64,000 nucleotides of DNA from Podarcis vaucheri (lineage: Eukaryota), in NCBI GenBank assembly GCA_965113315.1, contig OZ220371.1; one strand, given 5' to 3'. Below the pieces are notes generated by a model. The model was not told where the DNA came from. It did not search any database and worked only from the letters and a program-made list of their open reading frames with translations. Numbering within the stretch: position 1 is the first letter of the stretch; each line of letters starts with the position of its first letter. This document shows positions 14,241 to 62,574 of the stretch, piece by piece. The position numbers and the translations under genes were made by a program.

Positions 14241-15810
14241 TACTTCCCTTCAGAGGCACCAACTTAAGGGAAATGGGGCGGGGGTACTAGACAAGGTCAG
14301 TGATATGGGATGGGGGGCAGGAGAAAGAAGGGAATGCACAAAAGAAACTTGAAAGTAAATGGTGAAGCTCTGAGCAATGTCCCTTCTCCCCCTCTCCCTC
14401 CACCCCTGGCTCTTACAGCGTGTCTTATGTGGTTGAAATAGTGATTCTGTGAGGGATTTAATTGAGAGGACTGGGACTGTCAATGGGAGCTTCACTTGCT
14501 GTTAGAAGTGCATGTGGCAGACAGACTGTGCAACACACACACACACTTTGCAGAAGGAGCCAGGGAATGCAAATCTCAGTTTCTTCTTGTTTTGAAGTTG
14601 AGGATTTCCTCTGCTCACTCCCCCCCCCCCCCCGGCCTTCCAGCTCCAACCACAAGGACCATAAGAAATGAAGTCAGAGGTGTTTGCCCAATCCCATCTC
14701 CCTTGCCATCCAGGAACCCTTCTACAAGTTCCTTTACAGGGCTCGTTGGAAAATGAAGTCCAAACAAGGAAAAGGAAGACAATTATGCCCATCAGCTTGG
14801 GGGAGGGGGCCCAAATATTTTATGTGGGGCAAAGGGATCTGGGCCCCTAGGAGTTGGCGCCTATGCGTTCCTTGATATGGATACTAGACTGCTTTGGGTG
14901 CAGCCTGGAATAGCATTAGCTATTATTCCTAATGCTGTTACTGCAGTCAGACTTCCATCCCCGTCCAAATGGTGGATGGGAATTGCTCTTATTTTCCAGA
15001 ACACAGAAAATAGTACGTTTTTAGAGACAGCTACATCTGCCCCAAGCACTGGGGATTTAGGCACATACACACTGCTAGTTTCAATCATATTATAGACTGA
15101 AAGATGGCAGAGGAGGAAAAAACATTGTTCCAACTAACCAAGCAAACAACAGCATTTTGGAGTTAACAGCTCTTCCACCAGGTAGCTAATATATTATATA
15201 GAACTGCAAGATAGCTCTATAAAAGAGCAGAGTCCTCTCTTGAAAAATGATACACCAATAAATAAGATTAGTTGAGAAACCAGGATGTAAAGAAACGTAT
15301 TATGTATAAAACTTTTAGAAGGTTGGAAGTCGTCCAGGAGATAAAGCTCACTAGGTAGGGAAGAAAGAAAAGGGAATTTGGAATCCAGCCACACTCTGAT
15401 GAGTCCAAGAGGCTTTTTGGAGTTTTACTGCTGTCCTTGAAAGTAAGTTTTCACCTTGGCTGTGAAGTTATCCAGCTCTGTGAAAGTGCTCATCTGGCTA
15501 TTTCTGTTGAATAGTGAGTAGACATAGCAGACGACGCAGCAATTTCTCCAAAGCAGCTCTTTATTTGTAAGCTGGAACAGAACTGAACAGCAAACAGCTC
15601 AGCCGGCCTGCTTTTACAGACAGCCAGCTGTCAACATTGTAGCAACAACAACCCAGGGTTTCCCGCCTAACGTAACTGACGTGGACCTGAGTGAAAACTA
15701 TCTACACGATACTCCTGGTGGCCAGGGTGAGAACTGCAATACATAACACCCCTCCCCACCGAGATAAGGCATTAGTTACAATCATAGTGGTTCCATTACA
15801 AACAGCATTA

Positions 15811-16124
15811 CAGTGGTGCCTCGCAAGACGAAAATAATCCGTTCTGTGATTCTCTTCGTCTAGCGGTTTTTTTGTCTTGCGAAGCAAGCCCATTGACGGA
15901 TTAGAGAATTAGCGCTATTAGCGGCTTTTAGCGGCTTATCAGCTTATCGGATCAGCTGAAAAGGGGGGGGGAGGGGAAAAAACCCGCAGGAACTCGCAAG
16001 ATATTTTCGTCTTGCGAAGCAAGCCCATAGGAGATTCGTTTTGCGAAGCACCTCCAAAACGGAAAACTCTTTCGTCTAGCGAGTTTTCCGTCTTGTGAGG
16101 CATTCGTCTTGCGGGGCACCACTG
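15811..16124. mobile_element. Tc1/mariner (Tigger/pogo-like) MITE inserted in the LTR element
   Basis: TIR CAGTGGTGCC(T/C)CGCAAGACGAA; TA TSD at 15809-10 and 16125-26. Confidence 0.9.
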
Positions 16125-16199
16125 TACGCTTATTGGTTTCAGTAAGGCACATAAGCATATTAATTGACCCTATTCACCATACAGCTTTACATGTGCAGT

Positions 16200-26617: not shown

Positions 26618-26756
26618 NNNNNNNNNNNNNNNNNNNNNNNNNNNNNNNNNNNNNNNNNNNNNNNNNNNNNNNNNNNNNNNNNNNNNNNNNNNNNNNNNNN
26701 NNNNNNNNNNNNNNNNNNNNNNNNNNNNNNNNNNNNNNNNNNNNNNNNNNNNNNNN
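26618..26756. other. Assembly gap (139 N) immediately upstream of the CpG island
   Basis: Run of n. Confidence 1.
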
Positions 26757-27125: not shown

Positions 27126-27401
27126 ATGTCCAGCAGCGGCAGCACCGTCGCCGCAACAGCAGCACCAGCAGCAGCGGCGGCCTCGGCGGCGACAGCAGCC
27201 TCGCCTCCCGCCCAGCCGCCGCCGCCGCCCCCTCCGCCTCCCCCGCCGCCGCCTCAGCCGCAGCCCCCGCCGCCGCTCCCCGGGACCTCCTCGGCCGCCG
27301 CCGCCGAGCCCGAGCTGGTCTCCCTCATCCTCAACCGCCTCAAGAGCCAAGGCCTCTTCGACCAGTTCCGCCGCGACTGCCTGGCCGACGTGGACACCAA
27401 G
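27126..27401 (+). CDS. BOD1L1: BOD1L1 coding exon 1 (Ala/Pro-rich N-terminus, start of BOD1/Shg1 domain)
   Basis: GCGCCATG start; LKSQGLFDQFRRDCLADVDTK; donor AAG|GTGAGG, phase 0. Confidence 0.95.
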
Positions 27402-28277: not shown

Positions 28278-28476
28278 AGCCAGTGCAAGCAATATGGAGC
28301 TAGACTTGTTTGAGGCAGCTTCCTGTGCTGCTGTGGCTCGAGGTGTGGAGTAAAAGCTTTGGGTTGGGGTGGGCTGCTGGCAGACTACTGGGCAGAGCCT
28401 GGCAGTGCCTGGCAGTTTGGGATGTGTGGCTTAATGGATGTGGGTTTTTACCTAAAAGTGAAAACAGAGACAAGTA

Positions 28477-28808
28477 CAGTGGTGCCCCGCAAGACGAATG
28501 CCTCGCAAGACGGAAAACTCACTAGACGAAAGAGTTTTCCGTTTTGGAGGCGCTTCGCAAAACAAATTTCCTATGGGCTTGCTTCGCAAGACGACAATGT
28601 CTTGCGAGTTCCTGCTGGTTTTTTCCCTCCCCCCTTTTTCTAAGCCGCTAAGCCGCTTATCAGCTGATCCGATCAGCAGATAAGCCGCTAAAAGCCACTA
28701 ATAGCGCTAATCCGCTAATCCGTCAATGGGCTTGCTTCGCAAGACGAAGAAACCGCTAGACGAAGAGAATCACGGAACGGATTCTTTTCGTCTTGCGAGG
28801 CACCACTG
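28477..28808. mobile_element. Tigger/pogo-like MITE, followed by a templated insert and a duplicated 34-bp terminus (28925-28958)
   Basis: TIR CAGTGGTGCC(C/T)CGCAAGACGAA, TA TSD. Confidence 0.9.
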
Positions 28809-29647
28809 TATTGAGCTGGGCTCTGGATCTGTGAAGTCCAGTGTGACATATTTGTGCATCTGTGCTTTCCGAAGGATGACTCAGGGACCCAGATCCAATG
28901 CTCTTCTCCTACACATGTATTTCAGAACGGATTCTTTTCATCTTGCGAGGCACCACTGTATAAAACAGCTCTTTTCCTTTAATTCTCCACCTCTGTGCTG
29001 TGAATTTGCTCCTTAACCAGAATTTTTAAGGTGAAAGTCGAAAGCATGAGGTGTCCGGTCAAACAGAAGACCTTGCAATCCTAGTTGCCAGGCAATTGAG
29101 AAAGATACCAAAGCTCTGCCCTCACCCGACCACTATTGTGAATACTCACTCATCTCCTGTTTTCCTCTTCCCTAGGCTAGTATCTTAGTGAAATAGATCT
29201 CACTGTGGTAGGAAATTTGTGGGGGGGCTGTATCACTTCAGACTGAAGGTGCAGACTCGTATGATAGAATGATTTGCAATTCAAAAACATGCTTTGTACG
29301 TAGAGAATTAGATGTTGATGAGAACTAGCCTATACTACAAGTGCAAGAGAGTACTCCGTGCTGTTTTTCCAGACAGAGGTGTAGGAACTCACCCTTGTTC
29401 TCTCTCAATGGCTCCCACCTGAAATAAAAGCCATTGTTTATTTAAAACAAATTATGCTAAATTTCATAACAAGCCAACTTCAAGCCATGTCTGGCTTCTT
29501 AAAATTACCCTTGTGTAAACCAGAATCCTCAGGTTGAATATAAAACCAAGCAGGGATTTGATTGAAACAAAACTTTTTCTGTGTGGTATGCAAGCCTGAC
29601 AGTTAGATTGGACTCATTCAGGCTTTTCAACATAGTGCTAAACCTGT

Positions 29648-30585
29648 CAGTTTGGATTTCATTGTGCAGAAAGTATTAATCTGATGTGTAGAGATCTTTG
29701 CTGTTCTACTTAATTCAAGAGGGTTCAGGAAGCTTCTCTGTGAAAGACACAAACAGAAGGTTTGTTTGTGTTATTCCTTCAGAGAAGCTGAGTACAGCTG
29801 GCTTAAACTGATTCTCTTCTCTTCTTCAAGGTTATGCAGCCTACACTGTAATAAGAGGCCAGAAGGGGGCTGGATTTCACTTTCTCTTTCTATCTCTCTT
29901 GCTTCAAGTGTGGTGTTCTGTACATAGCATGCTTAGTGTTAAGGTTTAGTCTTATTATAAGTTATTGTAAGTTTAAGTTAAGTCTGCTGCTACTGGATTT
30001 CCTATGGCCAGTGCCAATCCTGAATGTATTGGATTTGTGATCATTACGCTCATTTTTCTTAAGTAGCAGTAAAGCTCTGCTGAATGAAATACAATTGCCT
30101 CTGGTCTATTTTTTGGGGAATTCTGCAGCGTGTTTAAGTTTTTACTATTCTAACTATAGTTAGATTGGCTTCAACCAGAGCCAGGGCCTTTTCAACACTG
30201 GCCTCGGCCTGGTGGAACGCTCTGTCTCATGAGACCAGGGACCTGTGGGATCTGATTTCTTTTCGCAGGGCCTGTAAGACAGAGTTTGTTCCGCCTGGCC
30301 TTTGGCTTGGAGCCAATTTGATTCCCTCCCTCCCTCTCTTTTTTCTTTTCCTTCTCCTCCTGCAAGGAGGCTACATTTTAATATTTTAATGTTTCAATAT
30401 TTTAATGTATTTTAATTTTGTTTTTAAGTTGTAATCATTCAACTTGTTTTTATTATTGCTTGTAAGCCGCTCTGAGCCCGGCCTTGGCTGGGGGGGGCGG
30501 GGTATAAATAAATATTATTATTATTATTATACATTGGAATCTGCTCTGGATCAATACTGAGTAGAATTTCAATGTCAAAACCATG
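29648..30585 (+). repeat. Left arm of long intronic inverted repeat (interrupted by L2 tail)
   Basis: Reverse complement of ~32940-33686. Confidence 0.9.
30159..30530 (+). mobile_element. L2 LINE 3' end with (TAT)n tail
   Basis: RAFSTLASAWWNALSHETRDL..LISFRRACKTE; TGTAAGCCGC..GGGCGGGGTATAAATAAA(TAT)n. Confidence 0.85.
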
Positions 30586-30892
30586 ATTAGTGTTATATGT
30601 AAATGCGGCCAATTTCAGCCAATATGCAAGGCTTAAGCAAGTGAGATACCTACTCCTGGCTTAAGACCTGTTGGCAGGGAAATTTTCTTTAAATTAAAAC
30701 ATTTGTTCCTCTGCCCCAGTTAGAGAAGGCTGGTGTGTGTTATGTATTTCCTCCCTCTTTTTAATTGAGTCACTTTAAGCTATGGTGTATTATCAAACTA
30801 ATAGACTAGACACGTTAAAATCAATGGGCTTAGTTAGTGACTAGCTTAAATCCATGGATTTCAGTGAGACTTCTCCTGTGTATGAATAAGTG

Positions 30893-31012
30893 ATTGGTGG
30901 TATTCAGCTACGTTTTATCCAGAGTAGACCCATTGAGATTATATAATATAAGTTAAACCTATTAATTTCAATGGGTCTACACTGAGTTAAACTTAGTTGA
31001 GTACCTTCCATT
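30893..31012. mobile_element. Palindromic ~120-bp MITE-like element 73 bp upstream of exon 2
   Basis: AGTAGACCCATTGA / TCAATGGGTCTAC inverted arms; sibling of 1484-1969. Confidence 0.7.
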
Positions 31013-31085
31013 GTGTCCAATCTCATGAATGCCAAGGATATGCTAATAAGAAGTTTCACATAGCATTTCGCATTTTTCCTTTTAG

Positions 31086-31210
31086 CCTGCTTATCAGAAC
31101 TTGAGGCAGCGGGTGGACAACTTTGTTTCCAACCATCTAGCAACTCATACATGGAGTCCTCACCTGAACAAGAACCAACTGAGAAACAATATTAGACAAC
31201 AGGTTCTCAA
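31086..31210 (+). CDS. BOD1L1: BOD1L1 exon 2
   Basis: TTTAG|CCT; PAYQNLRQRVDNFVSNHLATHTWSPHLNKNQLRNNIRQQVL; AA|GTAAGT. Confidence 0.96.
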
Positions 31211-31925
31211 GTAAGTTTCACTCCTTAAAATGCAGCAATGCCTAATGTAGTTGCATTGGAGAAAACAGTACAGGGGTCCAACCAATTGTTTTTTTAGTGG
31301 TGTTCAGATAGCTGCTGACACATCATAAATTAAAATTTCATTTCATGACCACTTTGATGGGGTGGGAGTGGGAAGACTGCTGTTTGAGTCATTGTGACAA
31401 CTCACTAGTCTCTGAATTTAGTAGGAAGTTCACAGAAATATAAGAAATCATATGTATTGTATTTATCACTTATACTGCTTAACCTAAGAAATTGGATCTC
31501 CGCTCCATTTTTTTAACATAGAAAAAGCACGTACTAGTTTCAAGAGCAATTTAGAGAGTAGTGTTTAATAGATTACCATCTTTCAACTTAAGGATATTAC
31601 AGGTGTAGGCTTTGCTATGCTTAAATAAAAACAAATTCATATTTATTTCCATATCAGGTTATTATATTATTTTGTCCCATGAGTTAATACCAAACTCATT
31701 CTCCAAGCGTGGAGCCTTATGTAGCCAAAATGGCACCATCCAGTCACAAGTGGGAGTTACCGGCAGGCTTGTGGTGTCTCCCCAGACTTGCAGAACATAC
31801 TAAAGAACATACTTGCAGAACACACTAAAGATCAGAAATCTTTAGTGGGGGAGCCTTAATGGGGACTGGGGCTACATTTTTACCTAAAACCATTTTTAAA
31901 ATTGGTAATACTTTAACTTTTTAAC

Positions 31926-31962
31926 TGTGTGTGTGTGTGTGTGTGTGCGCGCGCGCGCGCGC
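31926..31962. repeat. (TG)n(GC)8 alternating purine-pyrimidine tract
   Basis: Direct reading. Confidence 0.95.
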
Positions 31963-32516
31963 CTATATTATAATTACCATAGTCTACAAACAATGAAAAT
32001 TTGATTGACTGAATTACAAGATAAAAAAGAGTTTTTCTATTGGCTTGAAGCAAAAATAAAGTATTACTTTTTAGCAAGTGTATTCACTGTGTGTGCTTCA
32101 GCACTGTTATCCCCATAATGGGCAGCCAAGTATTTCCCCCTGCTCCTCCCCAAGAAGTAAACAAGTTTGAAGCTTTATTGTTATAGTGCATTATTATAAG
32201 AGAGCTGGGGTAGGGTAGTGGCTAAGCGTGACCTATGAACCAGGAAGATCCAATTTCAAACATGTGTTGTTAGGCTAGTGACTCTCTGTTACTATCATAT
32301 ACATGCATGCTTTGTAATATGCAGGTGAATCTGGAGTATCTTATTAGGGAACCCCAAGAACATATATGATGAAGTCTTTGCACAACTGAAATAAGCTCTT
32401 TACTATTGTTATCATCATCATTATCAACATCCTCCTGTACAGAGTTATTGCAGGACCAATATGAGGCGAACTTCCTAGACAAAAATATGCTATTTTATGT
32501 TGTTGTTTTGTTTCAG

Positions 32517-32707
32517 ATCTGGAATGCTAGAATCTGGAATTGACAGAATAATTTCTCAAGTTGTCGATCCAAAGATCAATCACATATTCAGGCCGCAAGT
32601 AGAGAAAGCTGTCCATGAATTTTTAGCCACATTAAGCCACAAAGAGGAGGCCAGTCCCATCGCAGCTGCACCTGAGGAAAAACCGGACACTTCTGTTCTG
32701 ATCCAAG
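32517..32707 (+). CDS. BOD1L1: BOD1L1 exon 3
   Basis: TTTCAG|A; SGMLESGIDRIISQVVDPKINHIFRPQVEKAV; AAG|GTATTT. Confidence 0.96.
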
Positions 32708-32939
32708 GTATTTATGTCCATTGTTCCCGGCAGAACTGATGTGCTATGAAGTCTTAATTTGGAGCTTGGTGACTCTGTAAGCAGATGGGAAGGTATCAAG
32801 GAAGGGAAGCTGAGGTTTAGCCTCCCAACTTCTAAGTAAGTGTTCATGGTGCAATCTTACCAGTATAGGAGTTGGTCTGAAATTGAGTTGAGTCCTAATT
32901 AATTATCATGATCTCCTCCAAGGATCAATTATATGTAGG

Positions 32940-33686
32940 ATGATTCTGTCATTTATTCTACTCATATTGATCCAGAGCAGAACTCCAGTGGTATAGTTAG
33001 CAGAGTAAAAACTTAAACACGTTGCAGGATCCCCAAAAAATAGACCAGAGGCAATTGTATTTCATCCAGCAGAGCATTACTGCTGCTGAAGAAAATTGAG
33101 CATAATGGTCACAAATCCAATACATTCAGGATTGGCACTGGCCATAAGAAGTCCAGTTGCAGCAGACTTAATTCAAACTTGCAGTAACTTATAATAAGAC
33201 TAAACCTTAACACTAAACATACTATATACAAAACACCACACAGTTGGAAAGAGAGATGAAGAAGAGAGTGAAACCCAGGTTCCTTTTGGCCTTGCTATTA
33301 GAGTCAGCATGACCTTGACAGAAAAAGATAACAGAATCAGTTTAAGCCTGCTGTACGCAGCTGCTCTGAAGGAATAACCCAAACATCATGTGTTTCTTTT
33401 ACACAGAGAAGCTTCTACAACTCTCTTGAATTAGTTGCAGGTAGGTAACTGTGTTGGTCTGCCGTAGTCGAAACAAAATAAAAAAAATTCCTTCCAGTAG
33501 CATCTTAGAGACGAACTAAGTTAGCTATTGGTATGAGCTTTAGTGTGCATGCACACTTCTTCAGATCTTCAGCTGGTCTCTAAGGTGCTACTGGAAGGAA
33601 TTTTTTAATTTTCTCTTGAATTAATTAGAATAGGAAAGATCTCTACACATCAGGTCAGTACTTTCTGTGCTAAGAAATGCAAACTG
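32940..33686 (-). repeat. Right arm of long intronic inverted repeat (interrupted by Penelope fragment)
   Basis: Reverse complement of 29648-30585. Confidence 0.9.
33434..33611. mobile_element. Penelope-like fragment with partial inverted duplication
   Basis: TTCCTTCCAGTAGCATCTTAGAGAC / GTCTCTAAGGTGCTACTGGAAGGAA; 12-bp TSD TCTCTTGAATTA. Confidence 0.7.
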
Positions 33687-33740
33687 GAGGATCCCCCCGC
33701 CCCAGAAAAATCTTTGATCACATTGGACGTTGACCATATA

Positions 33741-33992
33741 CAGTGGTACCTCTGGTTGCGAACGGGATCCATTCCGGAGGCCCGTTCGCAACCTGAAAAG
33801 GACACAACCCGCGTCTGCACACGCGCGAGTTGCAATTCGCCGCTTCTGCGCATGCGCTTGACGTCATTTTGCGTGTCTGTGCGTGCTTGAGTGGCGAAAC
33901 CTGGAAGTAACCCTTTCTGGTTCTTCCGGGTCACCGCAGGACACAACCTGAAAACACACAACCTGAAGCAAATTTAACATGAGGTATGACTG
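33741..33992. mobile_element. Tigger-like MITE
   Basis: TA|CAGTGGTACCTC ... GAGGTATGACTG|TA. Confidence 0.85.
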
Positions 33993-34128
33993 TATGCGTG
34001 AAGCCTGCAATATCCCCTCCCCCCAATTACTCAGGTTTCTTTTTTGCTTTAATATATGAGACATGAATGTAAGAGCAGATTTTTCCGACTAATGGATGAC
34101 ATTTGTTCTTTACTTAACTCCTTTGAAG

Positions 34129-34755
34129 GTGTTCCTGCTTCCACTCCAAGCACAAATGTAGCTAATGATGCTATGTCCATTTTGGAAACAATCACTTCTC
34201 TAAACCAAGAAGCAAGTGCAGCCAGGGCATCCACAGAAGCAACAAATTCAAAGACTAATGACAGAGTCCCGAAAAAACTCCTGTCTCAGCAGAGCACAGA
34301 TGGTGGTATAGAGAAAGACGGTGGTGTAGAGAATTCAGAAGATCTGCTAGATGGAGAGAAATTGCTTTGTGACTCTGCAGAAGAAAGCTCTGAACCAGTA
34401 TCCAACTCAGAAGATGTAAATAACTTATTTTCTTCAAGTGAAGAAGGGAAAAGTCTGTCAAAAGAAATTAACAGTTTGGTTAACCCAAGCAAAGAAGCTG
34501 CACAGGAAAGTGATGAGCAGAAAAGTAAACTGATGGCCCAAAGTGATAGGAAAATAGAGAGCATGGAGAAAGGAGAGAGGAAAAAGGAGAAGAAAGAAAA
34601 ATCTGAGAAAAAGTTGGACCGCTTGAAAAAGAGTGGTGATGATCTAAAGGCTAAAGAAGAGAAGTCCCTGAAAGATAGAGAGGCAGAATCAGCCAAATAT
34701 TCAGCTCTGGAGAAGAACAGTAGTAAGCACAAAGCAATGGAAAGTACAAAAGAAG
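34129..34755 (+). CDS. BOD1L1: BOD1L1 exon 4
   Basis: NVANDAMSILETITSLNQEASAARAS; AG/GT boundaries, phase 1-1. Confidence 0.93.
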
Positions 34756-35076: not shown

Positions 35077-35226
35077 AACTGGTTTTGGAGGATTCTGATG
35101 TTGACATACTCAGTGATATCACTGTTAGCTCTGTGCACACCAGTGATCTTTCTTCCTTTGAAGAACAAAGTGAAGAGGAAGTTGCGCTTTCAGACAGCAC
35201 AGAAGAAGGAGAGATCGTTTCTGATG
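35077..35226 (+). CDS. BOD1L1: BOD1L1 exon 5
   Basis: DSDVDILSDITVSSVHTSDLSSFEE..SDSTEEGEI; phase 1-1. Confidence 0.94.
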
Positions 35227-35408: not shown

Positions 35409-35808
35409 CAGTGGTGCCTCACAAGACGAAAAGAATCCGTTCCGCGAGTCTCTTCGTCTTGCAGCAAGCCCATTAGCGGATTAGCGCTATTAGTTGCTTA
35501 GCGGGCTAAGCGGATCAGCTGATAAGCGGCTTAGCGATCAGCTGATAAGCGGCTTAGCGATCAGCTGATAAGCGGCTTAGCGGATCAGCTGATAAGCGGC
35601 TTAGCAGTTTAGGATCAGCTGATAAGCGGCTTAGCGGCTTGGGGAAAAGGGGGGGAGGGGAAAAAACCCACAGGAACTCGCAAGACATTTTCATCTTGCG
35701 AAGCAAGCCCATAGGAAATTCGTTTTGCGAAGCACCTCCAAAACGGAAAACCCTTTCATCTAGCGGGTTTTCCGTCTTGCGAGGCATTCGTCTTGCGGGG
35801 CACCACTG
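35409..35808. mobile_element. Tigger/pogo-like MITE with expanded internal 23-24-bp minisatellite
   Basis: TIRs plus TA; five GATCAGCTGATAAGCGGCTTAGC units. Confidence 0.9.
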
Positions 35809-35827
35809 TACAGAGTTTAAGTTGATA

Positions 35828-36124
35828 CAGTGGTGCCTCGCAAGATGAAATTAATCCATTCCGCAAGTCTCTTCGTCTTGCGGTTTTTTCGTCTTGCGAA
35901 GCATGGCTATTGGCGGCTTAGCGGCTGTTAGTGGCTTAGCGGCTATTAACGGCTTAGCGGCTTTAAGAAAAAGGAAACAAACTAGCAAGAACTCGCAAGA
36001 CGTTTCGTCTTGCGAAGCAAACCCATAGGGAAATTCGTCTTGCGGAACGACTCAAAAAACGGGAAACTCTTTCGTCTTGCGCGTTTTTCGTCTTGCGAGG
36101 CATTCGTCTTGTGAGGTACCACTG
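35828..36124. mobile_element. Related Tigger/pogo-like MITE, 19 bp downstream
   Basis: CAGTGGTGCCTCGCAAGA..TCTTGTGAGGTACCACTG, TA TSD. Confidence 0.88.
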
Positions 36125-38103
36125 TAACATCTTATTGCAGTAGTGGCTGGCAGTGGGGGTGCTGTTACTTCCCTGGCCTCTCAATACGGGTGTCGCTACC
36201 AGTAATCATGAGGTTCAGGGGCGAGGCAGGAGGGAGGTTCCTGCAGGTGCTGCAGTGGAGCCAATCAAATGCTTCCTTTGCTGGGTCTGCAGTGCAGGAA
36301 CCTCCCTGCTGATTTGCTCCTCTTAGCTACCAATAGTGAGTTGATTAGGAAACCACACCACTTTGCCATCTGCTACTATCTGCCCTAAATGCTCACATGA
36401 GAGCATTCATGGAAGCTCGCACAAACATACACACTGATATCTAGGTACAACACAGGAAAAATGTTTTTCATCAGTATTGACATGAAATCACCCATTTTTT
36501 GGAAATTGGTCAAAAATGAATTGAGCATACAGTTCAGTAGCAGAGATGTTACATGCCCTCACATAGACAACCTATTTTCATCACAGAGTTAAATTTGCTG
36601 TGTTCTGTGCAGTTTGAAAATTGCATAGCTGTGGGCACAAAACTCTTAAATTAATCTGCAGCCAAATGCTAGGCTTGTCTTTATCATCTCATTAATCCCA
36701 TGTAATCTGTTAGTTGAGAGTACAGTATAATCTAAATGGGGTGTTCATTTAGGGCTGTACACAGGCCCCTAATCCACCCTGTGACTGACATCTGTGGCCC
36801 GTGGATCAGGTTGATATGCCCTGTGCCACCTGGGAACCACCTTGGAGCTGTCCCCCAAATAAGTGGGGGATTTTGAGTATCATTTTTAATGGGTTTTAAA
36901 ACCATATTTTAATATTCAGTTAAACTGGGGCTTTAAAATGACCAGGGATGGGAGTGCACCATAACTGTGCAGAATAGGATCCTGTCTGGTGCTGCTTTGC
37001 AAGTGACTTTCCTGCAGGAAATCTTGCAGTGCAGCACCCACTGCCTATGGAATCAATGCCTCTGCTCAACAGCTGTGGCATCAATTCTGTGGGGCATCGA
37101 GGCAGGAAGGAGACTCATGGCACTGGGCCTACCTTCTCCCAGAAGACAGCTGCCAGCCAAGTAAGTCTTGGAGGTATTGCACAGTTTTCTGGCCCAGTTT
37201 ATCTGCCTCTGCTTCTGCCTGTTGTCCCATCCTCTGACAGCAACAAATTTGTCTGGACCAAGACAACCTGACTCAGAGCAATTCATGGCTATGTACTCGA
37301 CCTGTCTGAGTGCTCCAAAGAAGCCCCATTTGGCTTGGGCCTCATCTAAATCCAGGGCTCAGCCTAGGGTTCATCAGGCCGTCTATTCAAATGCTAATAC
37401 ATTTTCAGATTTTAGTGGATATGCCTGTGCTACGTCCCAAATTGAAACCAATGCATACCTTCAATAAATTGTTGCTGAGACAGCTAGGTATTCTACAATC
37501 CTGCTGCAATATTTCAATTTCCAGAATCCTTGCCAACTTGCCTTGTAGCACCTGGGTACTAAGTGCTCTATGTTGCTGTTTATTAATAAACTAACTAACT
37601 AACTTTAACCCCAACAGATTTTGGGGATTTAAGCTCTCCCTTAGTTTTAGATGTGTGGGAAAACAAGGCAAGAATTTGAAGAGCTATGTGCAAGCACAGA
37701 ATGTTTGTCAACTGGCCAGGGGGCGGGAGGGAAGCTTGCCTTGAGTGGCTGATTTTTCACTTTCAGCTTCTGCATTGAGCAGTAGGTCCCCTGACTGCCA
37801 GCATCAGATTTTGAGATGGAACACAAGGAGCTACAGTAGGAAGAAGGCAGAATGGATCTTTTGTTCACATGGAACTTTCTGCCGGTCCCTTTCATCCCAG
37901 CCTAGATCTGGCTTTTAAAAACATCTTTCAGTTAAGGTGGGGAGGGGTACTTGTGTCCTTACAGATGTTTGTTGGGCTCCAGTTCCTATTATCCCAGAAC
38001 TTTGCCTTTGCTGATGGGAATTGGAGTTCATTGACATCTTGCATGGCACCAGATTCCTTATCCATGCTGTTTAGTAACCTTCATTGTCTCTATGTTTCTC
38101 TAG

Positions 38104-47778: not shown

Positions 47779-47878
47779 TACAGATGGTATCTGAAGAAGT
47801 GTGCATGCACACGAAAGCTTATACCAAGAACTAACTTAGTTGGTCTTTAAGGTGCTACAGGAAGGAATTTTTTTTATT
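47779..47878. mobile_element. Penelope-like fragment
   Basis: CTGAAGAAGTGTGCATGCACACGAAAGC; 12-bp TSD TTGAATACCACC. Confidence 0.7.
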
Positions 47879-48709
47879 TTGAATACCACCCACACTCTTT
47901 AGCTGCCACATCTGACTTCAGATAGTGGGGCACTTTGAAGCAGTAACTTGCAGTATAAAGTATGAAGTAGTGCAAAGAATCAAAGCCTTTATAAAACTGA
48001 AAATTGTCTTACAATCCTATACCTTTGAAATCATGGTGTGTAAATGTTATATTCTTTCGTCACTAGGGTTGTGCTGGATTTGGCAATATCTGGAAGAGTT
48101 AGGAATTTCTAGAACTGTTCTGTTTTGTGGAACAGACAATAAAGTTCACGTTTAACTTTCTAACTGGGATATCCTCTGAAGCTGAGCCATGGAAGGCTTA
48201 GTTATTTTAAACCCACCAGTTCCTAATGAAACACAGAGAAAGGAACAGTTACCTGCACCAGAAGCTTCTATCTTTAATAATCTTGTAGCATAGCCTTGAA
48301 TGGAGAGAGAGATTAGCTTGCTTTTGCCTAGATATAAAATGCCACAGAGAATAAGGAATCATGCAAGTAAGTTTAATTGTAAAATCTTTACTGAAGAGAG
48401 CCAAAGGCACAACAGGGACACTATGCCCATTTCATCCCCCAAGAGGAATGTAGTTTGAGGGCGCCTGCTTCTGTCAAAGAGCCCAAAGCATAGAGACACT
48501 GTTGATTCATATGCTAGGGCCTTGTAAGAACATGCTGAATACTGAGCTTGCTGTTAAAATAATATATTAATAGAGTGGTGCTTGGGGTTCTAGACAAAGG
48601 ACTCTATGAAGGAATGCAGTTAATAGATGACATCAAATATTGCAAGACAGCAATAACATTGCAAGGAGTATAATCAAATGAATATAAACATTTAAATTGC
48701 TTTTGTTAG

Positions 48710-58377: not shown

Positions 58378-58618
58378 CAGTCAAACCTCAGTTTTCGGAC
58401 ATCTCGGCTGCCAAACATTTTGGAAGCCAAACACCAAAAACCCGGAAGTGAATGCTTCCATTTTCTAATGCCCCTCAAAAGCCAAACAGCTTCCAAGGCA
58501 TGTTTCTCAATTTTCCCCACTGAACTTGCTGGCGTCCCTTTGAGCCTCGGTTTTCAAATGTTTTGGAAGTCGAATGGACATCCGGAACGGATTACGTTGG
58601 AAAACTGAGGTTCCACTG
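58378..58618. mobile_element. Tigger-like MITE
   Basis: TA|CAGTCAAACCTCAGTTTTC ... GAAAACTGAGGTTCCACTG|TA. Confidence 0.8.
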
Positions 58619-58662
58619 TATTAAGCAAATATCCTGTTCCTTTGCATACCTACCCCATAGAA

Positions 58663-61659: not shown

Positions 61660-61782
61660 GTAATTATTCAAAAAAAAATCTCTTTGGAAAGGAAGAAAGA
61701 GTGGAAAGGATGAGGTGCATCTGTAACTCAGCCATTTTTCTTTAAAGAGTTACTACTCCAAAAATTCAGATCTAGCCTTATA

Positions 61783-62003
61783 CAGTGGTACCTCTGGTTA
61801 CGAACTTAATTCGTTCCAGAGGTCCGTTCTTAAGCTGAAACCGTTCTTCTCCTGAGGCATGCTTTCTCTAATGGGGCCTTCCCCCGCTCGCGTACGTCCG
61901 GCACGCAATTTCCGTTCGTATCCTGGGGCAAAGTTCGCAACCAGGAACAACTACTTCCGCATAACCGCATAACCTGAAGCGTTCATAACCAGAGGTACCA
62001 CTG
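61783..62003. mobile_element. Tigger-like MITE
   Basis: TIR CAGTGGTACCTCTGGTTA, TA TSD. Confidence 0.88.
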
Positions 62004-62574
62004 TATAAACTCTTGTGGGTCTACAAAACAATGGTGCATGCAAAGACCTTCCCCCATCTATTTCAAAGATGAGTAAAACACTTTGTCCAGCTTCCAAGTG
62101 GACTGATTTCAGTGGCATTGACATGGATGCCAGAGATTTCTCACTTCTGTGAGTAGGGCAGTTTAGGGTGCTTGGGTCAAATGGCAAAGTAACCACTGTG
62201 ACTCACTGCTTCATACACTGTTCCAGTAAGATTTTGAAGCGAAGCAACTGCATGGTTTACTCAGGCTGCTGGCATGGGAAGTAACCAATTGCATCCACCT
62301 TTTTACCAGACTGTAGCATTTACAACTAACATCAAGCATTTCAAAATCCTGAGCTGCCTTCCGTTTGCCATTGGTGGACATCTCTGCCAGAAATAACTTA
62401 ATTTTTGCTTTATTATGCTGTGGCGAATTTTAGAAAGAAATCCTTTTTTAAAAGTTCCTTGGTCATTTAAGTTTAATTTAAACTTCATACGAAAAATGAC
62501 GGTTATAACAGTTGGTGTGTTCAGAGTTGCAGTTTATGTAGAGTTCTTAACACATTTTTTTCTTCCTTTTTTAG

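What the first reader, a model, noticed from the sequence alone, without database searches (positions are those of the whole stretch)
29648..33686. Long inverted repeat brackets exactly BOD1L1 exons 2-3: candidate circRNA / exon-skipping / dsRNA-editing switch
Seen: 29648-~30585 (intron 1) and ~32940-33686 (intron 3) are reverse complements over ~570 bp after removing an L2 tail (30159-30530) from one arm and a Penelope piece (33434-33611) from the other, so the pair predates both insertions. A hand-aligned ~230-bp core is ~90% identical, with perfect runs of 32-38 bp (e.g. TATGGCCAGTGCCAATCCTGAATGTATTGGATTTGTGA). The arms show no TIR, TSD or tail of their own. Established: reverse-complementary intronic matches promote back-splicing and ADAR editing. 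Inference: pairing loops out exons 2+3 (125+191=316 nt, most of the BOD1/Shg1 domain), giving a 316-nt circRNA and/or a frameshifted, NMD-targeted skipped mRNA, i.e. a lineage-specific post-transcriptional control on a fork-protection gene.
Basis: partly seen in the sequence, partly recalled or inferred. Interest (0 to 1): 0.8.

Follow-up and report, generated by a model that had tools for sequence, protein, structure and literature searches.

The report
Inverted transposon copies flanking BOD1L1 exons
The long inverted repeat around BOD1L1 exons 2-3 is real, but its arms are two old copies of a high-copy lizard interspersed repeat lying in opposite directions, a common arrangement that may allow some circular RNA but shows no sign of being a dedicated control switch.

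Summary
A unit of about 565 bp in intron 1 (29648-30158 + 30531-30584) is the reverse complement of one in intron 3 (32940-33433 + 33613-33686). Identity is 87% over aligned bases and 89% in a 228-nt core, with perfect runs of 38, 36 and 32 nt. Each arm is split by one nested insertion. Only exons 2 (125 nt) and 3 (191 nt) lie between the arms.

The reading is mostly not supported. Whole-genome contigs of two lizard species pile up on both arms at 300-2000 times the single-copy level, with 50-100 or more distinct contigs per site. Other family members are 85-89% like arm 2, the same as the arms are to each other. Most listed sites where an arm departs from the family majority are private to that arm.

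Pairing is very strong in silico, and skipping exons 2-3 would shift the frame. However, the only RNA runs available have almost no intron reads and 3-6x depth on exons 2-3. No back-splice or A-to-G signal was seen, and none could be excluded. A second inverted pair in the same gene brackets exons 2-5.

Verdict: an ordinary inverted transposon pair and an untested circRNA candidate.

The parts
29648..30158 (+). Arm 1, main part (intron 1): copy of a ~565-bp interspersed repeat
   Evidence: inverted match to 33686-32992; summed contig depth is 11,000-52,000 against about 30-65 in unique intron.
30159..30530 (+). Nested high-copy retroposon-like insert with an (ATT)n tail, splitting arm 1
   Evidence: One search shows it is absent from arm 2. 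In one search, family contigs join about 30531-30540 directly to about 32991-32996, and depth here is 300,000-450,000.
30531..30584 (+). Arm 1, terminal part next to exon 2 (about 500 nt upstream of the acceptor)
   Evidence: match to 32981-32940. In the fold the innermost pair is 30577-32947.
31086..31210 (+). BOD1L1 exon 2 (125 nt)
   Evidence: AG/GT borders. (Shg1 profile positions 27-66). (stranded RNA depth about 3 in the bin).
32517..32707 (+). BOD1L1 exon 3 (191 nt)
   Evidence: (Shg1 profile positions 75-102).
32940..33433 (-). Arm 2, main part (intron 3), reverse complement of arm 1; starts about 235 nt after the exon 3 donor
   Evidence: depth is 13,700-64,600.
33434..33612 (.). Nested insert splitting arm 2, with a 12-bp target duplication (TCTCTTGAATTA) and its own hairpin (33482-33517 / 33571-33606)
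   Evidence: In one search, family contigs skip 33414->33613, and depth is about 900,000.
33613..33686 (-). Arm 2, distal part
   Evidence: match to 29721-29648.
27126..27401 (+). BOD1L1 exon 1 coding part (ends in phase 0, donor GTGAGG)
34129..34755 (+). BOD1L1 exon 4; in the frame left by exon 1 it stops after 10 codons
   Evidence: RNA depth is 5-13.
28474..28813 (.). Intron-1 member of a second, outer inverted pair (partner at 35646-35924 in intron 5)
   Evidence: 166 nt at 92%, plus 100 nt at 86%. (duplex -292 kcal/mol).
35646..35924 (.). Intron-5 member of the outer inverted pair; together they bracket exons 2-5
   Evidence: Exon 5 was read at about 35077-35226.

Best explanation
The two arms are old, decayed copies of one high-copy, non-coding interspersed repeat of about 565 bp, a transposable-element family I could not classify. 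One copy lies in intron 1 and the other, in the opposite direction, in intron 3 of BOD1L1. Most likely they arrived by two separate insertions. Each was later hit by one further transposon insertion. In the pre-mRNA the two copies can form a very long imperfect double-stranded stem that loops out exons 2-3. Such a stem is the known substrate for occasional back-splicing and ADAR editing. Any such products here are most likely by-products of transposon insertion, not a selected control on BOD1L1. Shown: the repeat itself, its multi-copy nature, its presence in two species, and the predicted pairing. Inferred: independent insertion, and the by-product status of any circle.
For: Multi-copy. Summed contig depth over the arms is 11,000-65,000 in species A (run X1) and 22,000-127,000 in species F (run X11). 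Adjacent unique intron gives 30-65 and 50-90. Each listed arm site carries 50-100 or more distinct contigs, against 1 at unique sites.

Nested inserts are secondary. Several distinct single-copy-depth contigs run straight across both insertion points (joints 30533<->32991 and 33414->33613). Family copies without the inserts therefore exist elsewhere in the genome.

Arm-to-arm likeness is ordinary. The longest family contigs laid on arm 2 differ at 23/215, 33/224, 29/218, 26/179 and 34/273 letters, which is 85-89% (table 8). The arms are 87% alike.

Most departures from the family majority are private. Of the 24 printed arm rows, 16 are private to one arm and the partner has the majority letter. 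Seven rows, which are 5 site pairs, are shared.

Homology ends where unique contigs begin. The X1 contig 29103-29662 stops 14 nt into arm 1 and another starts at 30545. The flanks of the two arms are unrelated.

There is a weak hint of separate decayed 8-9-bp target duplications at equivalent borders: AAACCTGT/AAACCATG and GGATCCTC/GAATCATC, reached by 55 of 1000 random controls.

The pair is old and shared between species. Species F, about 2.5% diverged in unique intron, has the exon-side junctions of both arms (X11 contigs 30548-30989 and 32411-32984).

The arrangement is common. There are 11 inverted pairs of at least 60 nt within 15 kb in this window, including a pair bracketing exons 2-5.

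Pairing is strong in silico. Duplex energy is -597 kcal/mol for the core, against -142 when shuffled. In the minimum-energy fold of 29500-33800, 496 of 565 arm-1 bases pair with arm 2.

Background: transposon dimers in flanking introns drive mostly non-conserved, low-level circRNAs that look like splicing noise (PMC8516420).
Against: No terminal inverted repeats (local score is at the shuffle mean), no clean target duplication, no tail, and no tRNA-like or other known RNA head. The element class is therefore unknown, and transposition is inferred from copy number alone. The read-laying output itself warns that summed contig depth is not a true copy number. There is no third copy in the 64-kb window, so two copies 2.4 kb apart are locally unusual. 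Five listed site pairs are shared by both arms against the family majority. This fits a shared subfamily but also a local duplication or gene conversion. Only 40 of 656 difference rows were printed, so the private-versus-shared count is a sample. No usable RNA evidence exists, so a real and even abundant circle is not excluded.
Confidence: 0.8

Rival explanations
1. One reading: the pair is a lineage-specific post-transcriptional switch. Arm pairing loops out exons 2-3. This yields a 316-nt circRNA and/or an exon-1-to-4 mRNA that is frameshifted and degraded, plus ADAR editing, and so tunes BOD1L1 output.
For: The geometry is favourable. The innermost predicted pair lies 509 nt before the exon 2 acceptor and 240 nt after the exon 3 donor. 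The duplex is very stable. The arms have no competing partner inside the window. Skipping gives a stop after 10 codons of exon 4. The pair is kept in a second species. Exon 2-3 depth, at about 5-6x once corrected for exon length, is lower than exon 4 depth of 8-13x, although junction-mapping losses on short exons can explain this.
Against: The arms are ordinary members of a high-copy family and no more alike than other members, so nothing points to selection on pairing. No back-splice joint is among the rows printed, and there is no A>G excess: RNA gives A>G 62 and 53 against G>A 80 and 79, and DNA contigs give 40 and 47 against 59 and 66. Both results are weak, because intron depth is near zero and reads on the arms come mainly from other copies. 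Presence in a species only 2.5% diverged is expected for neutral old insertions. Cross-species work in mammals finds such transposon-driven circles to be mostly non-conserved by-products (PMC8516420). An outer inverted pair offers an alternative fold.
Confidence: 0.07
2. Local inverted duplication: one transposon copy inserted once, and a later local rearrangement copied it in reverse to the other side of exons 2-3.
For: There are two copies of the same extent only 2.4 kb apart and no other copy in 64 kb. Five listed site pairs are shared by both arms against the family majority.
Against: Homology ends at the family's own borders, and the flanking DNA is unrelated on both sides. A segmental copy would usually carry some flank with it. 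Each arm has a different possible decayed target duplication. Sixteen printed rows are private to one arm, and the arms are as far from each other as from other members.
Confidence: 0.1
3. Assembly artefact or chance similarity.
For: None found.
Against: E=4e-136. Independent contigs of two species cover the junctions between unique intron and the arms.
Confidence: 0.01

Closest known systems
Inverted transposon pairs (reverse-complementary matches, e.g. inverted Alu pairs) in introns flanking circRNA exons
   Same: Two opposite copies of one interspersed repeat sit in the introns on either side of internal exons, close to the splice sites. They are predicted to pair and bring the downstream donor near the upstream acceptor. 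This is the architecture reviewed and analysed in PMC8516420.
   Different: The arms are long (565 bp) and old (13% diverged over aligned bases), from an unclassified lizard repeat and not a young SINE. No back-splice read has been seen. PMC8516420 finds that young, little-degraded elements are the ones most associated with circles.
ADAR-edited intronic double-stranded RNA formed by inverted repeats
   Same: The predicted stem is long and imperfect, with perfect runs of up to 38 bp.
   Different: No editing signal was found, and the available libraries barely sample introns.
Non-autonomous hAT-type DNA transposons (8-bp target duplication)
   Same: The element is short, non-coding and high-copy, starts with CAG, and may have decayed 8-bp flanking repeats.
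   Different: No terminal inverted repeats. The target-duplication signal is not significant (55 of 1000 controls). It is not filed as a member.

Membership tests
Interspersed repeat (transposable element) family | Many copies dispersed in the genome | tested here: met
   summed contig depth on the arms is 300-2000 times the single-copy level in two species, with 50-100 or more distinct contigs per site. Unique intron bins stay at baseline.
Interspersed repeat (transposable element) family | Copies share defined ends that coincide with the ends of homology | tested here: inconclusive
   Unique contigs stop at 29662 and start at 30545, and arm homology ends at 29648 and about 30584. The loose-end table was cut off, so the ends of other copies were not seen.
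Interspersed repeat (transposable element) family | Target-site duplication at each copy | tested here: inconclusive
   Best equivalent borders give 5/8 and 6/8 matches, and 55 of 1000 random controls reach the same score.
hAT-type non-autonomous DNA transposon | Terminal inverted repeats | tested here: not met
   local head-versus-tail scores are 9 and 11, against a shuffle mean of 9 and a maximum of 15-17.
SINE | Pol III head derived from tRNA, 7SL or 5S, and a 3' tail | tested here: not met
   ARAGORN finds nothing. Rfam at E<=1 gives only sub-threshold miRNA-like hairpins outside the arms. No A-rich or microsatellite tail is present at either end.
circRNA locus driven by reverse-complementary intronic repeats | Complementary repeats in both flanking introns near canonical splice sites | tested here: met
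circRNA locus driven by reverse-complementary intronic repeats | Back-splice junction reads (32707->31086) | tested here: inconclusive
   none is listed, but exon 2-3 depth is only 3-6x and unique-intron depth is about 0. Only 15 of 304 joint rows were printed, and even the linear junctions are not among them.
circRNA locus driven by reverse-complementary intronic repeats | Resistance of the product to RNase R / absence of a poly(A) tail | not testable with these tools
   No such library was offered.
ADAR-edited intronic dsRNA | Clustered A-to-G differences between RNA and DNA of the same animal in the arms | tested here: inconclusive
   there is no A>G excess (62 and 53 A>G against 80 and 79 G>A). 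Reads on the arms are mostly under 95% alike, so they come from other copies. No matched DNA was available.

The most novel reading that the evidence does not exclude
The inverted transposon pair does drive a reproducible exon 2-3 circle, and/or a frameshifted exon 1-4 mRNA, in these lizards at a level that measurably lowers functional BOD1L1 mRNA. The pairing has been kept for that reason.
Probability: 0.06. Interest if true: 0.45.

Novelty: new member of a known kind. Interest (0 to 1): 0.17.

Why it matters
If the circle exists, it would be one more case of transposon-driven back-splicing, this time in a reptile and in a gene that protects replication forks. It would be useful as a data point on circRNA origins outside mammals, but it would not be a new mechanism. 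As it stands, the finding mainly shows that long inverted repeats around exons in this genome are produced by common transposons and should not be read as regulatory devices without RNA evidence.

Tried and rejected
1. RNA test. Intron depth was about 0 and exon 2-3 depth was 3-6x. The joint table showed only the 15 best-supported rows, all from DNA contigs. Neither back-splicing nor skipping could therefore be judged.

2. Third copy in the window. None was found.

3. The scan's own index by sequence.

4. Classification of the repeat. No tRNA was found. No Rfam family reached its gathering score, and the only hits were miRNA-like hairpins of other nested elements. No terminal inverted repeats were found. 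Two attractive 8-bp flanking repeats with one mismatch each (TAGTGCTA/TAGTGTTA and TGTAGGAT/TGGAGGAT) were rejected, because they sit at non-equivalent element positions in the two arms and each has about a 30% chance expectation (my arithmetic on the search space).

5. Inversion alleles. The 'opposite strands' joints in DNA contigs were considered and rejected. Each joint is carried by 2-7 distinct contigs, which fits other family copies that lack the nested insert.

6. Literature. No paper links BOD1L1 to a circRNA. The held supplements of PMC8516420 do not mention the gene.

7. Steps left out. The N run at 26618-26756 was left untouched.
Full report
OBSERVATION

The inverted repeat is there. 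The repeat finder and blastn give three collinear reverse-complement blocks:
- 29648-29721 with 33686-33613 (85%)
- 29711-30158 with 33433-32992 (84% with gaps, E=4e-136)
- 30540-30584 with 32981-32940 (84%)

After removing the insert 30159-30530 from arm 1 and 33434-33612 from arm 2, a global alignment gives 549 aligned columns at 87% identity. The core is 228 nt at 89%. Homology begins sharply at 29648/33686 and fades near 30584/32940, and the flanks are unrelated. The arm-2 insert has a 12-bp target duplication.

GENE CONTEXT

The gene lies on the + strand.
- Exon 1 coding part is 27126-27401 and ends in phase 0.
- Exon 2 is 31086-31210 (125 nt) and exon 3 is 32517-32707 (191 nt), both with AG/GT borders.
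- Exon 4 is 34129-34755.

Scanned exon by exon by reference, exons 1, 2 and 3 match Pfam COMPASS-Shg1 profile positions 2-26, 27-66 and 75-102 of 102. Exon 4 read in the frame left by exon 1 stops after 10 codons.

WHAT THE ARMS ARE

No third copy lies in the 64-kb window.
- X1: whole-genome contigs of organism A, which is probably the window's species.
- X11: whole-genome contigs of organism F. Its unique intron contigs differ from the window by about 2.4-2.8%.
- X23 and X24: two bulk RNA runs of organism F.

Depth. Unique intron bins have summed contig depth of 31-67 (X1) and 50-91 (X11). The arm bins have 11,258-64,646 (X1) and 21,757-126,881 (X11). Single arm sites are covered by 50-100 or more distinct contigs, against one at unique sites. 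The tool warns that summed depth is not a copy number, so I read this only as hundreds to a couple of thousand copy-equivalents at 80% likeness or better. The control is internal, because unique bins of the same stretch stay at baseline.

Nested inserts. Several distinct contigs of single-copy depth run straight across both nested insertion points (joints 30533<->32991 with 7 contigs in X1, and 33414->33613). Uninterrupted family copies therefore exist elsewhere in the genome.

Similarity. The longest family contigs laid on arm 2 are 85-89% like it (table 8). That equals the arm-to-arm figure.

Private versus shared changes. Of the 24 printed arm rows where the window differs from the family majority, 16 are private to one arm and its partner carries the majority letter. 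Seven rows, which are 5 site pairs, are shared by both arms, and one differs three ways. The shared sites fit a common subfamily. They do not exclude a local duplication, which I keep as a 10% rival.

Other points. Against duplication, homology ends where unique contigs begin (29662 and 30545) and the flanks are unrelated. There is also a weak hint of different decayed 8-9-bp target duplications at equivalent borders, reached by 55 of 1000 controls. The element has no terminal inverted repeats, no tRNA-like head, no Rfam match and no tail, so its class stays open. Organism F carries the exon-side junction of both arms (contigs 30548-30989 and 32411-32984). The pair is therefore older than that species split, as its 13% divergence over aligned bases implies.

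HOW IT COULD WORK

In silico the arms pair.
- Duplex energy is -597 kcal/mol for the core, against -142 when shuffled.
- In the minimum-energy fold of 29500-33800, 496 of 565 arm-1 bases pair with arm 2.
- The innermost pair lies 509 nt before the exon 2 acceptor and 240 nt after the exon 3 donor.

This is the known architecture for repeat-assisted back-splicing and for ADAR substrates (PMC8516420). The step from structure to product is inference.

RNA EVIDENCE

The RNA evidence is inconclusive.
- About 12% of each RNA run was read.
- Unique intron bins have depth 0-0.45, which suggests the libraries hold little pre-mRNA.
- The exon 2 bin has 3.3 and 3.1 in X23 and X24. The exon 3 bins have 4.1+1.35 and 0.19+2.6. 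Exon 4 bins have 5.5-12.8 and 6.6-9.6.
- Reads have the first mate on the minus strand, which fits a + strand mRNA in a stranded library.
- Only 15 of 304 joint rows were printed, all resting on DNA contigs. Even the linear junctions are not listed, so the lack of a back-splice row is not evidence.
- Change counts show no A>G excess: RNA gives 62 and 53 A>G against 80 and 79 G>A, and DNA contigs give 40 and 47 against 59 and 66.
- Reads on the arms are mostly under 95% alike, so they come from other copies.

HOW UNUSUAL IT IS

It is not very unusual. The window holds 11 inverted pairs of at least 60 nt within 15 kb. One of them is 28474-28813 in intron 1 against 35646-35924 in intron 5 (166 nt at 92%, -292 kcal/mol). 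It brackets exons 2-5 and nests around the pair in question. Other first-stage notes on this genome list inverted repeats around exons of EBF2 and ZFAND3 (unchecked). By my own rough arithmetic, about 1,500 copies in about 1.4 Gb give a handful of same-family pairs within 4 kb by chance, from this family alone.

COMPARISON WITH WHAT IS KNOWN, AND VERDICT

This is an instance of the inverted transposon pairs that flank circRNA exons. In mammals such pairs are mostly young and species-specific, and their circles look like splicing by-products (PMC8516420). No paper links BOD1L1 to a circRNA.

The special status given to the arms is not. The circRNA, exon-skipping and editing idea remains an untested possibility of ordinary kind. 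Interest is low.

Noticed in passing
window 28474-28813 and 35646-35924 (also 36056-36126 and 15806-16127): A second inverted transposon pair lies in the same gene (166 nt at 92%, plus 100 nt at 86%). It brackets exons 2-5 and nests around the studied pair. Another copy of the same element lies upstream of the gene.
   Followed up: partly
window 33737-33995: A very high-copy element directly after arm 2, with contig depth of 160,000-400,000. Sharp loose ends at 33738/33739 and 33994/33995 appear in both DNA and RNA runs, which suggests a short element with well-defined ends. Partial copies lie at 61776-61840, 61980-62007 and 58571-58621.
   Followed up: no
window 30899-31005: A palindromic high-copy element (43-nt arms, 81% complementary) lies about 80 nt upstream of the exon 2 acceptor. 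A related copy is at 1868-1970. It gives only sub-threshold miRNA-like Rfam hits. RNA reads on it come from many copies.
   Followed up: no
window 33482-33606: A hairpin (36-nt arms, 92% complementary) lies inside the insert that splits arm 2. A related copy is at 47789-47881 in inverted orientation. It gives a sub-threshold mir-559-like Rfam hit on both strands.
   Followed up: no
window 31928-31962: A compound (TG)n(CG)n microsatellite in intron 2. The reads tool skipped it as a repeat.
   Followed up: no
window 26618-26756: A run of 139 N lies just upstream of exon 1, in the GC-rich promoter region.
   Followed up: no
window 32685, 34202, 34493, 34548, 34739: Exonic single-letter differences between the window and species F were seen in all RNA reads, and all five are also carried by F's DNA contigs (X11). 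At 34493 the X1 contig of the window's own species carries the alternative letter too. These are species or individual differences, not editing.
   Followed up: partly
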